A DNA stretch of 62,921 bases, the filler included, from Reticulomyxa filosa (taxonomy: Eukaryota > Protista > Foraminifera), in assembly GCA_000512085.1 (NCBI GenBank). It is 17 parts of 17 records of this genome, joined end to end, with 100 filler letters (N's around TTAATTAATTAA, not from the genome) between each part and the next. Parts side by side here need not be neighbours in the genome. Positions count along the whole stretch, not along the records: positions 34,452 to 39,264 come from ASPP01029303.1; 16 more parts are not named here. The stretch is one strand, 5' to 3'. The translations under genes and the position numbers were made by a program. Every line of letters begins with the position of its first letter. The first letter of the stretch is position 1. A model generated the notes under the pieces. That model was not told the DNA's origin, did no database searches, and saw only the letters and a program-made list of their open reading frames with translations. This document shows positions 3,896 through 39,264 of this stretch, piece by piece.

Positions 3896-5337
3896 TCATG
3901 TTTTAATGACAATTACTTTCCCATAAAGTGGGCTGTCGTTGGTGAGCACAACAACATCACAAACACCAGAACCTTGCTCGTCCACGCAAGGGGCAAAGGA
4001 AAGAAAAAATTTTGTGTAGTACACGTTTATGTATTGGTGTTTCTTTCGTGCGTGATCATAATGAGAATAGCTTTTTTGAAACGTGTTGAACCCACTCGCT
4101 CCAGCAAACTGTGTAAGTAGTTCGATAATAACTTCGGGTAACTCAACCCCACACGTGTACTTTTCAAAATTGCGCAGCACATTTTTTTTCCTCCTAGCTC
4201 CCAAGAGCACTGGTTGACGATGACATCGACAGTGTGGTAGTTGTCAATGTTTTTTCGTAAAACCAACAAAGCGTTGTTGTCAGAGTGACTCTCTTTCCAT
4301 TGAAGTTCGCCAAACAAATAGTCACCAAACAAACCAATACGACGGTCGCGTTGAGCTTCCAGCACGTTGGACAGCTCAGACGACGCCACTACCGTTTGTG
4401 CAGTCAAGTCGATGATCTGATAACTGGTTTGTCTCAGCGACTTTACCGCTAAAAACTTGCAATCGGGAGAAAAGTAAAAGTAGCTTTTTTCCAGTTCAAT
4501 TGTGCCATAGCTTTCCATTTGAAAAGAGTGCACTTCCACTTTGCTGCTATCTTTGCAATTAACTTTCATTACTATTTTTTTTTTGAATGTATACTTTGCA
4601 CTTTTGCTTAAGAAGAAATTTTAAAAAAAAATTATGTTTAATCGATCCATAAAAAATTTGGAAATATGATTTAAATTTAGAAAAATCACCAGTCAAAGTC
4701 GGGTTCTTGAACTTGGTCAGTTTGTCTTTGAGCACCAAGACGAACACGCACGGAACAGACACAAAGTAACAAGGTATTGCATATGCGACCAACACTTGGC
4801 CGAAATCGACGGAAAAGGTTGCGACTTTTTTCAAATTGGCTTTTTCGGCTGTCCACTTGTATTCAAACACCAAGTGTCCTGGCTCCTCCATTGCACTGTT
4901 TGTACATATCCCTATCACCTCTCTTCGTCCACAAACTTACGTTCCAATATGTCCCAAGAACTATCCAATCGCACTTGATTGCAAATTGATGTTTCCCACG
5001 CACTTACTGTCAACTCCCATCTCGATTTACTTACGCCGGTGCACACTATGTACGTTCCCTTTGGAGACAACATATAGCATGCACCTGCTATGTTCACTGT
5101 GGACGCATTCTTATGCACCAGCTCCAATTGGCTTATGCTTTCGTTCAATTTATATAGTCCTACAAACTTCGCACAATGAATTAGCACGAAACGCCCCGTC
5201 TTGCTTAGGTGAACACGTAACACTTTCATTACTTGGTCCTTGTCCAGCTCATATTCAAAATGTGGAGTATCTAAAGATGAAAAGATTTCACTTTTCGTTT
5301 CTTTGTTGCTTACAGACAAAGGGCCAAAACCGAGCAT
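3896..5337 (-). CDS. Hypothetical protein, possibly beta-propeller-like, with a C-terminal LPxxIIxLLxxF segment
   Basis: Four consecutive minus-strand ORFs (4915-5337, 4559-4918, 4027-4569, 3896-4210) join through one intron (~4570-4680) and two apparent 1-nt frameshifts (~4917, ~4185). Contains YFSPDCKFLAV and MLSPKGTYIV propeller-like segments. Confidence 0.55.
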
Positions 5338-34351: not shown

Positions 34352-35350
34352 NNNNNNNNNNNNNNNNNNNNNNNNNNNNNNNNNNNNNNNNNNNNTTAAT
34401 TAATTAANNNNNNNNNNNNNNNNNNNNNNNNNNNNNNNNNNNNNNNNNNNNGGGTTGTTTGAAATAAGAGGAGGAGGAGAAGACTGATTGATGCACGATC
34501 CACAAAAATTTGTAATAAGTACAAGATTTCGGCAAGAATTCCTTATCATTTTTTTTTCCTCCTTTGAACTACAAAACAATCTTTCTTTGGACTCAACAGA
34601 GCTTTTCATGCAAAAAAAAAAAAGATTATTTTATATACCTCTCAAAAGTGCATGTTTTGGCATTTTGTCTATCTCAATTAAGAATAAAAACTGATCTGTC
34701 GTTTTTAAACTTTTATTTACAGGCCAAAAACCTTGGATTTTGAGATATCGTGATAAAATTGTTTACTTGTATTTTTATCAAAAATTTTTTCTACTCTTTT
34801 GTAAAATAGTTAAAAAAAGTACTCTTTTTGACAAGCAACAAAACGACATTGTTTAGAACACATCCATATTTTTTTTTGTCCAGTGTCCCAAAAAGACGGG
34901 AAATTGTTTTAAAAAAAACTATCTAATTTTTTTTTAGTCTGATATAATAACTTTGTTTTTGATTGTGTACTTAGTTTGAAAGAGAATTCCACAATAGTTT
35001 GATGATTAATATGCAAGCTACTGATCAATCACAAGTATTGATTCTCCCAGGTGACTTTAAACTTAAAAGCGATGGGAAAAATTTTTTCAAATAAGTAAAT
35101 GTTCCCATTTTTCATTGGAAAAAAAATAGTGTTGAAAATGGCCACCTTTACTTTTGATGCAATTAACGATGAAAGTAAAAACAAGTATAACTTGGATTGT
35201 AAAAGAATTGGACTTTGTGGAGGGATGAACCACACAACAGAAAAAAAGGTGAAATCAGCCTCTGAACAAAGAATGGGAAATGATACACAAACGCCACACT
35301 TGGTAATAACATTATGAACTATTTAGTTGATATCACACGTTTACACACAC

Positions 35351-36574
35351 ATGGAAACAAGACAGCAAACACAACAAACAACAAAACAGACCGATGAAAT
35401 AATTGCAATTGTTTTGGAAAATTGGGTTCGAATAGCAGTAATTTATTTAGGATGGATTAGAGAATTTGATCAACTTATTGCAAAATATGTTGCGTTGTTT
35501 TGTTTTTTGTTTGTATGGGTGATATCAATATCAATGATGCATTGATTTATAAAAAAAAAAAAAAAAAAGGCCAAATATTTTCGACTATTAAAAATTTTTG
35601 ACGTTGATTCATATCGGGCCAATATTGTAAAATTTTCACCAGATGGCAAAACTTTTTTGTCCACAGAAAATCAAAAGATCCAAATATGGGATGTGGAATC
35701 AGGAAAAGAGTTGAAAAAAATGAAAGGACATGTAGACACGATAGCAGATATTCATTTTTCAGCAGATGGACAGAGAATTGTATCGAGTTCATATGACGGA
35801 ACGATTCGATTATGGAATGTAAGCACTGCCAAATTGTTGCAAAAGCTGAGTGGATATACGTCCGGTATAATGAATGTACGCTTTGCACCAGATGGCTCCT
35901 CCATTGTATTTCTCACAAGTGATGAAAAGCTCAGGATATGGGATTTGACACATGATGGACGTGTAATAAAATTTCAAGGCCATGCACACCTTATCGTAGC
36001 AGCTGTGTTTTCACCTGATGGTCGTAGCATTGCCTCCTGCTCTGCTGACAAAACAATTCGATTGTGGGATGTTAACTCAAAACAGTCAATCCATGTATTG
36101 AAAGGACACACTTCAGCTGTGAATGGAGTGCAATTTTCATCAGATGGTCAAACTCTTTTGTCTTGTTCAGAGGATAAAACAGTTCGGCTGTGGGATGTCA
36201 GATCAGGACAACTTGTACGGACATTACAAGGACATACCAATTATGTGACAGGAGCCAAATTTTCTCCAGATGATCGTCTCATTATGTCCTATTCGGATGA
36301 TCAAACTATTCGATTGTGGAATACTGCGTCAGGAACAGAATTACAAACTTTCACAGGCCATACAGATGCTATAATGGATGCGCATTTTTCACCTGATGGA
36401 TGTTATCTTTTGTCATGCTCTTATGATAATATCAGGTTGTGGGATATAACCACTGGACAGGAAGCCCAAAGATTGAGCGAACATTCTGGGTGTATCATAC
36501 TTATGTGCTATTCACCAGCTGGTGACTACTTTGTTTCATCTGCTAACGATGGAACAATTCGGTTGTGGGGATAA
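35351..36574 (+). CDS. WD40-repeat protein (8 repeats) with short N-terminal helical module
   Basis: Exon 1 35351-35488 ends ...IVLENWVRIAVIYLGWIREFDQLIAKY. Phase-0 intron 35489-35569. Exon 2 35570-36574 has eight GH...FSPDG...LWD repeats. Confidence 0.93.
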
Positions 36575-36990
36575 CAACTCATTTTTACAAAAAATAAAAC
36601 ACTTAATTCAATAAGCATATTGAAAAATTAAAAATTAAATCAATGCTATGTTATATTTTTTAATTTTTTTAAAAAGAAGACTGATTAATCTCAATATATA
36701 CTTATTTTTTTAGACATTATATCGACATTTATGGTCTATACATTAGCAAAAAAATTAAGCAAATTTTAATTGGTCAACATTCCAAAAAAAAATATTAAAA
36801 TTTTTTTTATTTTTATTTACAACGCACAAATATATTTCATCTTTTATGTTTTTAATCTTAGCACAAATCCAAATCGAATGTTGAAAAACGGTAAAATCAG
36901 TAGGTACAAAATTTGAAGTAAAAGTGCTCCTCCAAAATAACATAAATAACATAAATAACATAATCTCCAAGCAAAAATCTGTGTTATCTG

Positions 36991-38032
36991 ATGAAAGAAT
37001 TTGTAGGTTTCAATGCCATCAAACAAAGGAAGCAAGTAAAGCTTCCAATTACTATTGTGGGAGAGCGTAATGCCGGTAAAACGGCGCTGTTGTCGAGATA
37101 TGTCGACAACGAATATGAAAATGACTATGCTTCAACTTTTGTACAATTTGTTTTTGTTTTTTTGCAAACTTCAGACAAAGAAGTCTTTTTTCTTTTAAAG
37201 AAATTGTTGTAAAGTTTAAAACAACTTTGTTCTCAATAAAAAAAGAATAGTCAATAAATGTAATGGAAAAAAGGATCTTAAAGAAAAATGTAGAGATAGT
37301 ACTCGGGTTATGTGATGTCGGAGGAATTGATTATGAATCAAGGCCATCACTATTTACTACCGCGCTGGCGATAATATTTGTATTCGATTTGGTAAATGTT
37401 TCATCTTTGCCACCATTAAAAAAGTGGTACAAACAAGCAAGGAAGCTTAACAAAGTCCGTGCGTATATTATTTCACAAAAAAAAAAGTAGAGTCAGGGGG
37501 AAAAAAAAATTTGTTTGGGCTTGTTTATTTGTGGAATAGAAATTTGTTCCACTATTGGTTGGTGCGAAATATGATAAGTTTAAAGGCTCAAGTAACGAAT
37601 ACAAAATAATGATTACAAGAAAAGCGCGCAAAATGGCAAACCGAATGGATGGGCCTTTGATATATTGTTCTGCTGCTATGCCCAAAAACATATCGAAAAT
37701 TTTCCAACTTGCCATTCTTAAAATCTTCAATGTCGATCACATCATTAAAGAATACCACAATGAGTTAAAAGGGCCTGTTTTGGAATATGGACGCGTTTCG
37801 TAATTTTTTTTTTAAAAATTCAATTGCACGTGTAAGACACTTTTTTTTTTTTTGTGTGTGTGTTATAGCTGGCGAAATATCATATGGCATTAATCATCAG
37901 GCATTGGAGTCGATTGTGCGAGTTGAAAAAACCTGGGTACTTTAAAGAGATGGAAGATCTTGTTAAGATGTACGTGCGCATCGATTTTTTTTATTTTTTG
38001 GAGAAAAGATCGACATTATAAGGGGCAACTAA
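36991..38032 (+). CDS. Spg1/Tem1-family small GTPase (divergent) with a probable spliced C-terminal extension
   Basis: Exons 36991-37140, 37251-37454 and 37540-37794 read GERNAGKT, NVMEK, CDVGG, FVFDL, KKWYKQARKLNK, LVGAKYD, ITRKARKMA, LIYCSA, GPVLEY. Probable further exons 37869-37973 and 38009-38032. Unspliced, the ORF would stop at 37803. Confidence 0.88.
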
Positions 38033-38627
38033 AGTGAATTTTTTGTAGCTTTTGGAGGTTTCATGTATTTTTTTCGAAATTCAGTTGTGCTTTTATTTGT
38101 TTTTTCCTCACATGTTCGTTTTTGCAATAAAAAAAGAATGGTTTAATATGCACTGAGTGCAAACATTTTTTTTTGCATGCTTAATCAGCTGACTCGACAA
38201 ACGTTAGTATGTTTGCTTGTTTTTCACTTGTTCTCTTTTTTTAATTATTTTATCTTACTTCTTTCAATGTTTTTTTTTGTTGCTTTGATGCTATCACAAT
38301 GCGAATTTTATCAAAGTCACGATCTTTCGCGCCTTCCTTGTAACATTGTACAATGGGAAGAAAAAGACAAGAGAAAAATCAAATATTGTCCAAAGAAAGG
38401 CTTGTCCTTCTTATGCAATCATCGAAGTCCTATTTAATGTTGATTTGACTCACTTTTTTTACTTTTTTCCAATAATTATTACTCTTTTATCTCAAGTACC
38501 GAATTGAAAGGAATTCGCCAATCCTTTGTAGTTTAAAATTAGGAAGCAGTTGTATGATATTTCTTTGAAACTGCAGACGGGGTAAGAATGAAACTCAACA
38601 AAAACTTTAACCGCAACAAATTGGGAG

Positions 38628-39218
38628 ATGTTAACAGAAAATGGTAGCGATGAACAAAAATTTAACAAGAAAGAAATGACATATAATGGTATATGTAACT
38701 GTTCAGTTCTTACGAAGAGCTATGAAAAGCTTCAGCAGTCAAAGAACTGTTCACAGTTTTGGAATCTCTTTTTTAATTGGAAAAAGAAACTCCATTTTTT
38801 TTTTTTAATATTAAAAAAAAGATTGAACGCGCCATGGAATGGTACAAATAGTTTCAAATTCAGTGTCGCAATAGATTTTGGAACAGAAGGAACAGCAATG
38901 GCGATCACAAACAACAAAACGAGAGACACAACACGGATTTCGGATTGGAATAGCAGTGGAGTATCCGACAGCAAAGAATCGAATGGAAAAACAAGGACAG
39001 CATTGTTATTAGATCAAGATCGGCGAGTGATCGCTTTTGGCAATGAAGCTTACAACAAGTCTTTATTAATGAATTTCTTATTTTAAAATCGCAAATCAAA
39101 AAGATAGTAAATAGTTAAAATATAATTATATACAATACATTAAAACAGATATAAATCTCCAAATAATAAAGGCTCCAAAAATTGGTCACTATTCAATCGA
39201 TTTAAAATGCAGTTGTTT
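38628..39218 (+). CDS. HSPA12-like atypical Hsp70; 3' partial
   Basis: FSVAIDFGTEGTAMA, KTRTALLL, IAFGNEAY, WSLFNRFKMQLF. Exons ~38628-38688, 38822-39058, 39149-39218. Confidence 0.85.
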
Positions 39219-39230
39219 GGTTTGTTGTTT

Positions 39231-39264
<34 letters not shown>

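What the first reader, a model, noticed from the sequence alone, without database searches (positions are those of the whole stretch)
35390..38032. Exon-shuffled ~35-aa module shared by a WD40 protein (N-terminus) and a Spg1-like GTPase (hidden C-terminal exon): candidate lineage-specific F-box/SOCS-box-like adaptor system
Seen: WD40 exon 1 ends EIIAIVLENWVRIAVIYL-GWIREFDQLIAKY| at a phase-0 intron (35489). Downstream of the apparent Spg1 stop is an unannotated 105-nt AG/GT-bounded exon (37869-37973) reading LAKYHMALIIRHWSRLCELKKPGYFKEMEDLVKMY|. It is in frame with a donor at 37795 and followed by a 35-nt intron and IDIIRGN* (38009-38032). The two peptides align (I/V-I/L-x-x-W-x-R...G-W/Y-I/F-x-E-F/M-x-x-L-I/V-x-x-Y) and end at the same phase-0 intron position; the GTPase copy is a symmetric 0-0 exon. 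Known: short helical boxes fused to WD40 propellers (F-box/WD, SOCS-box WSB proteins) or to small GTPases (Rab40) recruit cullin-RING ligases. Inference: a mobile, probably unnamed adaptor box linking diverse substrate-binding domains to a common partner such as Skp1 or ElonginC.
Basis: partly seen in the sequence, partly recalled or inferred. Interest (0 to 1): 0.8.

Follow-up and report, generated by a model that had tools for sequence, protein, structure and literature searches.

The report
Propeller-flanking helical exon module
A 33-residue helical segment encoded by its own in-phase exon sits beside the WD40 or Kelch propellers of over 200 Reticulomyxa filosa proteins, and a diverged stray copy lies just after a small-GTPase gene, but nothing shows that the GTPase uses it or that it recruits a ubiquitin ligase.

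Summary
The sequence facts are right. The piece comes from Reticulomyxa filosa or a close relative. It carries a WD40 gene, a divergent Ras-superfamily GTPase gene, and an AG/GT-bounded 105-nt ORF (37869-37973) 66 nt after the GTPase stop.

The WD40 "N-terminal" peptide belongs to a large unnamed family. A 7-sequence profile finds 213 representative proteins, and all 20 that I traced are R. filosa. No Pfam or PDB sequence match was found.

The module is normally a 99-nt exon with phase 0 at both ends. It sits directly before WD40 propellers, between Kelch and WD40, or as the last exon of Kelch proteins.

The hidden ORF is a true but strongly diverged copy. It scores 13 bits against a 148-sequence profile, and none of 20,000 shuffles reached that score. 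It has the family's exon borders and exon-like GC, but the near-invariant GWI..F core reads GYF..M.

None of the 150 listed family proteins has a P-loop, so no second GTPase fusion is known. RNA evidence could not be obtained, so splicing to the GTPase is unproven (about 45%).

No F-box, SOCS-box or LisH similarity was detected. AlphaFold2 predicts only helix. My best reading is a mobile helical docking or oligomerisation module of propeller proteins. The ligase-adaptor idea is untested speculation.

The parts
35099..35302 (+). Upstream ORF/exon of the WD40 gene. It ends ...LCGGMN...TQTPHL with a phase-0 GT donor at 35303. Its 5' limit is unknown.
   Evidence: Sequence. The LCGGM motif and the L| border match P0007, P0011 and the P0097 gene. 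No Pfam hit.
35303..35389 (+). Inferred intron (87 nt, GT..AG, phase 0) before the module exon.
   Evidence: An AG lies exactly 11 codons before the invariant W, as in 6 of 8 module copies examined.
35390..35488 (+). Module exon of the WD40 gene (99 nt, 33 codons, phase 0 at both ends).
   Evidence: Scores 56.6 bits against the 148-sequence profile (this copy is itself a member of that alignment).
35489..35569 (+). Phase-0 intron after the module's final Tyr.
   Evidence: Same position as in the P0097 gene, L001 4348-4416. GC 23.5%.
35570..36574 (+). WD40 propeller exon (334 aa plus stop, 7-8 repeats).
   Evidence: Pfam WD40 E 8e-78. Best relatives include R. filosa WD40 proteins.
36991..37140 (+). 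GTPase exon 1 (P-loop GERNAGKT).
   Evidence: Pfam Ras E 7e-6.
37251..37454 (+). GTPase exon 2 (G3 motif DVGG, with no Gln after it).
   Evidence: Pfam Ras E 0.0055. Weak PDB matches to Rab27, Rab28 and Rac.
37540..37803 (+). GTPase exon 3 (G4 motif GAKYD). Stop codon at 37801-37803.
   Evidence: Pfam Ras E 0.0027. Atlas look-alikes are Ras-family clusters.
37795..37868 (+). Candidate 74-nt intron. Its GT at 37795 is in phase 0, two codons before the GTPase stop, and its AG is at 37867-37868. Unverified.
   Evidence: Sequence. GC 23% over 37804-37868. A donor of type GTTTC. also occurs in an annotated R. filosa intron, but donors are too degenerate to discriminate.
37869..37973 (+). Solitary, diverged module exon (35 codons, AG/GT-bounded, phase 0 at both ends). 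The core reads GYF..M instead of GWI..F.
   Evidence: GC 39%, like exons. No DNA-level repeat with 35390-35488.
37974..38032 (+). Doubtful. Without this splice the frame runs on to a stop at 38019-38021.
   Evidence: Sequence only. Shorter than all introns seen.

Best explanation
The peptide is one member of a large, unnamed protein module family known so far only from Reticulomyxa filosa.

What it is (shown):
- About 33 residues, predicted to be all helix. The hydrophobic side chains follow a heptad pattern, with near-invariant W...GWI..F......Y.
- It is encoded by its own 99-nt exon with phase 0 at both ends.
- It always lies at the edge of a beta-propeller: directly before WD40 propellers, between a Kelch and a WD40 propeller, or as the last exon of Kelch proteins.
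- Its anatomy and this spread of architectures are what exon shuffling predicts.
- The ORF at 37869-37973 is a genuine but strongly diverged solitary copy of this exon. It lies 66 nt after the stop of a divergent Ras-type GTPase gene.

How it works (inferred): an amphipathic helix or helical hairpin that docks propeller proteins onto each other or onto a shared partner.

Open question: whether the GTPase transcript splices into the solitary copy (donor 37795, acceptor 37869). I put this at about 0.45. Otherwise the copy is an orphan exon.
For: Family:
- 6 of 7 R. filosa WD40 hits carry the module just before the propeller. None of the other 113 WD40 hits of that search (none carries an R. filosa label; many are unnamed) does.
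- A 7-sequence profile finds 213 representative proteins at E<=1e-3. All 20 checked are R. filosa.
- In 111 of the best 150, WD40 repeats follow the module. Of the 38 without detected WD40, 30 stop within 31 residues of the module, which marks cut gene models.
- Kelch domains lie N-terminal in several members.

Exon anatomy:
- In the P0097 gene the module is exon 4249-4347, phase 0 at both ends.
- An AG lies 11 codons before the W in 6 of 8 copies. A GT follows the last Tyr directly in 4 of 8.
- Kelch genes end with the module plus four codons and a stop in L002 (twice) and L015, with no WD40 downstream on that strand.
- L004 shows Kelch-module-WD40 in one reading direction.

Structure:
- With the propeller attached, AF2 gives two helices at low confidence (pLDDT 50-64) next to a confident propeller.
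- Alone, with 148 sequences, AF2 gives one 36-residue helix at pLDDT 92.

Hidden copy:
- 13 bits, with 0 of 20,000 shuffles reaching that score. Both halves are significant.
- Family-type borders and 39% GC against 23% in the stretch just upstream.
- No WD40 remnant downstream.
Against: - No RNA evidence was obtained, so the hidden copy may never be expressed as protein.
- The hidden copy replaces the Trp that is invariant in 148 of 148 members, and the near-invariant Ile and Phe. That fits loss of constraint.
- No P-loop occurs in any of the 150 listed members.
- Decayed module fragments exist elsewhere in R. filosa DNA (L002).
- The docking or oligomerisation function rests only on helix prediction and domain positions. 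No partner is known.
- Only 150 of the 213 hits could be inspected, and R. filosa gene models are poor.
Confidence: 0.55

Rival explanations
1. The hidden ORF is an orphan pseudo-exon. It would be a stray, decaying copy of the module exon left by rearrangement in a fragment-rich genome. It would sit in the GTPase 3' UTR or in intergenic DNA and never be translated. The module family then has no link to GTPases.
For: - The family's invariant Trp and the near-invariant Ile and Phe are replaced.
- No GTPase fusion occurs among the 150 listed members.
- The GTPase ORF has its own stop two codons after the proposed donor.
- Donors in this genome are so degenerate that an in-frame GT is weak evidence.
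- Decayed half-modules and lone WD repeats occur in R. filosa intergenic DNA.
- The copy has no short tail plus stop like the Kelch-type terminal exons. It needs a doubtful 35-nt intron or a 16-codon run-on.
Against: - The 35-codon frame is open in DNA whose flanks are 23-31% GC.
- Exon-like 39% GC.
- Both splice borders lie at family positions.
- The replacements at core positions are conservative: W to Y, I to F, F to M.
- No propeller remnant lies on either side.
- The copy lies on the same strand, at a typical intron distance (74 nt) from an in-frame donor.
Confidence: 0.4
2. The module would be an F-box/SOCS-box-like adaptor that ties propellers (and a GTPase) to a cullin-RING ligase through Skp1, ElonginC or a similar hub. 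The family of over 200 members would be a set of substrate receptors.
For: - A short conserved box joined to variable WD40 or Kelch propellers in a large lineage-specific expansion is the typical layout of ligase substrate receptors (established knowledge; family size).
- The box sits before WD40, as an F-box does, or at the C-terminus after Kelch, as a SOCS box does.
Against: - No F-box, F-box-like, SOCS-box, BTB or LisH hit for 148 members at E up to 10. Their profile hits no such PDB chain either.
- Only one or two helices are predicted, not the three of an F-box or SOCS box.
- There is no LPxE or BC-box pattern in the consensus.
- The module also sits between two propellers, which is unusual for such boxes.
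- No partner was tested.
Confidence: 0.12
3. The module is an intramolecular structural element of the adjoining propeller: a cap, or an extension next to the strand that closes the ring. It would have no independent binding role.
For: - It is always directly adjacent to a propeller.
- In WD40 members only about 4-10 residues separate it from the first predicted strand.
Against: - AF2 places it with low confidence (pLDDT 50-64) beside a propeller at over 90.
- The same module serves two unrelated propeller types, on opposite termini.
- It is a separate exon.
- The solitary copy has no propeller nearby.
Confidence: 0.2
4. The likeness between the two window peptides is chance in AT-rich DNA.
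For: The 7-sequence profile gave only 6.4 bits (E 0.075 in the piece).
Against: - The 148-sequence profile gives 13 bits, with 0 of 20,000 shuffles reaching it.
- Both halves score independently.
- The start and end coincide with the family's exon borders.
Confidence: 0.02

Closest known systems
F-box fused to WD40 or Kelch propellers (e.g. beta-TrCP, Fbw7; plant F-box-Kelch)
   Same: A short helical box of about 40 residues next to a variable propeller, in a large lineage-specific expansion.
   Different: No sequence match to Pfam F-box models. One or two helices are predicted rather than three. There is almost no linker to the propeller. The module also occurs C-terminal to Kelch and between two propellers. 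Skp1 binding is untested.
SOCS box (WSB1 after WD40; Rab40 after a GTPase)
   Same: A short helical box at the C-terminal end of a binding domain. The Kelch-module-stop genes and the proposed GTPase-module layout mimic this position.
   Different: No SOCS-box hit and no BC-box/Cul5-box pattern in the consensus. Most copies are N-terminal to WD40. The GTPase fusion is unproven.
LisH motif before WD40 propellers (LIS1, TBL1, Groucho/TPL-type proteins)
   Same: About 33 residues of amphipathic helix with conserved aromatic and Gly positions, N-terminal to WD40. LisH acts by dimerisation (from memory), which is one way this module could work.
   Different: No Pfam LisH hit. The spacing between the aromatic residue and the Gly is about 4 residues longer. 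Dimerisation is untested.
Helix-loop-helix / H-box of DCAF receptors (DDB2, CSA) that docks into DDB1
   Same: A helical segment immediately N-terminal to a seven-bladed WD40 propeller that anchors it to a hub protein (recalled from the literature, not tested here).
   Different: No sequence relation is known. The DCAF motif is not a separate shuffled exon family. Here the module also follows Kelch propellers.
N-terminal helix of G-protein beta subunits (coiled coil with G-gamma)
   Same: A single long amphipathic helix just before a WD40 propeller that pairs with a small helical partner. The isolated module is predicted as one 36-residue helix.
   Different: The R. filosa proteins are called 'G-protein beta' only because of generic WD40 similarity. 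No G-gamma-like partner is known.

Membership tests
F-box | Match to the Pfam F-box / F-box-like profiles | tested here: not met
   148 module copies scanned at E up to 10 gave no F-box family among the 14 families hit. The window copies gave 0 families.
F-box | Three-helix bundle of about 40-50 residues with an LPxE[IL]L start | tested here: not met
   AF2 gives two helices or one. The consensus has no LP motif.
F-box | Binds Skp1 | not testable with these tools
   No multimer prediction or experiment was available.
SOCS box | Match to the Pfam SOCS_box profile; BC box plus Cul5 box | tested here: not met
   No SOCS_box hit. The profile search of PDB sequences returned only two chance-level hits, yippee-like 5 and lacto-N-biosidase.
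SOCS box | C-terminal position after the substrate-binding domain | tested here: inconclusive
   True for the Kelch-module-stop genes. Most copies instead precede WD40.
LisH | Match to the Pfam LisH profile | tested here: not met
   No LisH hit among 148 members at E up to 10.
LisH | Two short helices that homodimerise into a four-helix bundle | not testable with these tools
   The helical prediction is compatible. Self-association was not tested.
R. filosa propeller-flanking module (this family) | W-x8/9-G-W-I-x2-F-x6-Y pattern scored by the family profile | tested here: met
   WD40-gene copy 35390-35488: 56.6 bits.
R. filosa propeller-flanking module (this family) | Same pattern in the hidden ORF 37869-37973 | tested here: inconclusive
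   13 bits, significant against shuffles. But the invariant second Trp and the near-invariant Ile and Phe are replaced by Y, F and M.
R. filosa propeller-flanking module (this family) | Own exon with phase-0 borders about 11 codons before the W and right after the final Tyr | tested here: met
   Both window copies and L001, L002, L003 and L004. The hidden ORF starts 12 codons before the W.
R. filosa propeller-flanking module (this family) | Adjacent WD40 or Kelch propeller | tested here: not met
   Applies to the hidden ORF only. There is no WD40 remnant downstream, and the upstream neighbour is a GTPase.
Spg1/Tem1-type GTPase | Ras-superfamily G domain with P-loop, DxxG and a G4 motif | tested here: met
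   Per-exon Pfam Ras hits. Motifs GERNAGKT, DVGG and GAKYD are read.
Spg1/Tem1-type GTPase | Specific orthology to Spg1/Tem1 (TKYD-type G4, DLGGQ) | not tested
   The joined protein was not searched, since exons had to be searched apart. The resemblance of GAKYD to TKYD is from memory. The Gln after DxxG is missing.

The most novel reading that the evidence does not exclude
The GTPase really splices into the solitary module exon, and the module is a foraminiferan-specific docking box. It would plug more than 200 WD40/Kelch propellers, and at least one small GTPase, into a common hub such as a cullin-type ligase or another scaffold. That would be an independently invented counterpart of the F-box and SOCS-box systems, spread by shuffling of one exon with phase 0 at both ends.
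Probability: 0.1. Interest if true: 0.75.

Novelty: new variant of a known kind. Interest (0 to 1): 0.4.

Why it matters
It defines a protein module that no domain library names, present in at least 213 representative proteins of the only well-annotated foraminiferan genome.

Its gene anatomy is unusually clean for a protist. One 99-nt exon, with phase 0 at both ends, is found in at least three domain architectures. That makes it a good case for studying exon shuffling outside animals.

The profile also repairs many R. filosa gene models. Kelch-module and WD40 halves are often called as separate genes.

If the module proves to be a docking box for a shared partner, it would explain the large WD40/Kelch expansion in this giant, fast-streaming cell. 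If the GTPase link is real, it would parallel Rab40.

As it stands the function is unknown and the GTPase link is unproven.

Tried and rejected
- **Word-index searches with the module alone.** These found nothing. The motif is too short and too varied for 5-residue words, so the blanks say nothing.
- **A decayed WD40 exon after the hidden ORF.** tblastn and a repeat profile gave a weak hint at 38396-38533 (E 0.7-1.8). A read-through test with a linker-plus-blade profile scored that strand no better than the opposite strand. Rejected.
- **DNA-level duplication between the two window modules.** None found.
- **Relatives in JGI metagenomes.** The GTPase exon found none. A degenerate DNA pattern for the GWI.DF.K core gave 9 loci, all matching only the pattern itself.
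- **Fold search with the propeller model.** It returned only WDR5-like propellers and says nothing about the module.
- **Atlas look-alikes.** None for the module. Ras-family clusters for GTPase exon 3.
- **Splice-site scoring.** Abandoned. Annotated R. filosa donors are little more than GT plus A/T-rich sequence, so the candidate donor cannot be judged.
- **Joined protein models.** The GTPase was therefore never classified as a whole, and its annotated protein could not be looked up.
Full report
**What is in the piece.**
Places 34452-39264 are AT-rich eukaryotic DNA with short GT..AG introns.

Reading by eye, checked by translation and Pfam, gives three features:
- A WD40 gene, whose propeller exon is 35570-36574 (WD40 E 8e-78).
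- A three-exon Ras-superfamily GTPase gene (36991-37140, 37251-37454, 37540-37803). Its motifs are GERNAGKT, DVGG and GAKYD.

The best WD40 relatives include seven Reticulomyxa filosa proteins at 36-44% identity. No near-identical protein appeared. The source is therefore R. filosa, or a close relative whose gene models are not in the database.

- The module ends ...LIAKY at 35488, with GT at 35489.
- The ORF 37869-37973 is bounded by TAG| and |GTGCGC.
- A phase-0 GT lies at 37795, two codons before the GTPase stop.
- A 35-nt GT..AG stretch precedes IDIIRGN*.

**The WD40 peptide belongs to a large family.**
- Six of the seven R. filosa WD40 hits carry the same motif just before the propeller. 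The seventh starts right after it. None of the other 113 WD40 hits of that search (none carries an R. filosa label; many are unnamed) has it.
- A profile of seven copies (A1) was searched against 1.84 billion representative proteins. It found 213 at E<=1e-3 and 20 at E<=1e-10.
- All twenty hits traced to source are R. filosa.
- Of the best 150, 111 have WD40 repeats after the module. Of the 38 with no WD40 detected, 30 stop within 31 residues of the module, which marks cut gene models. None of the 150 has a P-loop.
- The N-terminal partner, where recognisable, is a Kelch propeller. Once it is another WD40.
- Pfam has no model for the module. A 148-copy profile (A3) hits nothing meaningful among PDB sequences.

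**Gene anatomy.**
- In the P0097 gene (R. filosa contig ASPP01007193) the module is its own 99-nt exon. It has phase-0 introns on both sides...TPQL| before it and ...TKY| after it.
- I compared eight copies, in the window and in four R. filosa loci. An AG lies exactly 11 codons before the invariant Trp in six of them, and 12 codons before it in the hidden ORF.
- A GT follows the last Tyr directly in four copies, and two codons later in two. In the remaining two the frame stops after four more codons.
- Those two are Kelch genes in L002 that end with the module (tails SRIK* and SKMN*). No WD40 lies downstream on that strand. L015 shows the same layout (SRKK*).
- L004 shows Kelch, module and WD40 in a row, split into two genes by the annotation.
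- The window's own WD40 gene fits the pattern. An upstream ORF ends ...TQTPHL|GT at 35302, and an AG at 35388-35389 opens the module exon at 35390. The module is therefore internal, not N-terminal.

**The hidden ORF.**
- *Homology.* Against the seven-copy profile it scores only 6.4 bits. Against the 148-copy profile, built without it, it scores 12.6-13.0 bits. That is E 7e-4 within the piece, and no shuffle out of 20,000 reaches it. A column-score test shows signal in both halves (22/100,000 and 317/100,000 shuffles).
- *Exon-like features.* Its borders coincide with the family's exon borders. Its GC content (39%) is that of exons, while the stretch upstream has 23%.
- *Divergence.* It replaces the Trp that is invariant in all 148 copies, and the near-invariant Ile and Phe (GYF..M for GWI..F). 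It shares no DNA-level repeat with the other window copy.
- *Surroundings.* No propeller remnant follows it. Only the GTPase gene lies upstream.

**Does the GTPase use it?**
- *For:* same strand, an in-frame donor, a 74-nt intron of typical size, intact borders, an open frame, conservative core replacements, and the precedent of module-as-last-exon in Kelch genes.
- *Against:* the GTPase has its own stop. No other GTPase fusion was seen. Donors in this genome are too degenerate for the in-frame GT to count for much. Decayed module fragments exist elsewhere (L002 4637-4690). The proposed 35-nt second intron is shorter than any intron seen.
- The decisive check is spliced reads, and it could not be run. 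I put the fusion at about 0.45 and an orphan exon at about 0.40. The rest goes to other uses, such as the ATG-initiated 45-codon ORF 37884-38021.

**How the module may work.**
- With the propeller attached, AF2 gives two helices (residues 9-22 and 27-41 of the model) at pLDDT 50-64, beside a propeller at over 90.
- Alone, with 148 sequences, AF2 gives one 36-residue helix at pLDDT 92.
- The conserved hydrophobic positions follow a 3-4 spacing that is interrupted around the invariant Gly.
- This is what a docking or oligomerising helix or hairpin looks like. Its use on two propeller types, at either end and in between, argues against a mere structural cap.
- No sequence feature ties it to the F-box, SOCS box or LisH. 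The ligase-adaptor reading rests only on analogy: a short box plus variable propellers in a large expansion.

**Limits.**
- Only 150 of the 213 hits could be seen.
- R. filosa gene models are ab initio and often wrong.
- Spliced protein models were not submitted to any search.
- The metagenome scans were narrow.

**Verdict.**

Noticed in passing
window 35099-35302 (+): The ORF upstream of the module exon carries a '...CKRIGLCGGMN' motif about 25 residues before the module. The same LCGGM(N) motif occurs in only 6 of 90 family proteins with enough upstream sequence (P0007, P0011, P0124, P0129, P0156, P0218). That marks a small subfamily with an N-terminal region Pfam does not recognise.
   Followed up: partly
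window 37251-37454 and 37540-37803 (+): The GTPase has DVGGID, so no Gln follows DxxG. Its G4 motif is GAKYD instead of NKxD. It may be catalytically slow. The 'Spg1-like' label was not tested on the whole protein.
   Followed up: no
window 38835-39057 (+): An exon-like ORF (GC 41%) reads ...FKFSVAIDFGTEGTAMA... and gets no Pfam hit. From memory, it looks like the first phosphate-binding motif of an actin-like/Hsp70-type ATPase. The gene is cut by the end of the piece.
   Followed up: no
window 37994-38029, frame +2: 'GEKIDIIRGN*' resembles the start of a module ('GEKIDLILENW' in P0037), with a stop where the Trp would be. tblastn E is 1.6, so it is not significant. It could be a second decayed module fragment, or chance.
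   Followed up: partly
L002 4637-4690 (-) and 4823-4894 (-): A half-module (17 bits, with Trp replaced by Leu) and a single WD repeat lie in intergenic DNA between two Kelch-module genes. R. filosa therefore carries decayed fragments of this family.
   Followed up: no
L004 958-3273; L003 2648-3719: NCBI gene models split one Kelch-module-WD40 gene into two genes in L004. They omit the module of a WD40 gene in L003. Many 'module at the C-terminus' proteins in the database are such cut models, often running 'Y-V...' into the intron.
   Followed up: partly
L002 4169-4282 and 6466-6578; L015 922-1044: A Kelch subfamily ends with the module followed by a conserved four-residue tail (SRIK, SKMN, SRKK) and a stop. 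Database proteins P0160 and P0242 end the same way (SVMK, NRMK). This looks like a real C-terminal variant of the module.
   Followed up: partly
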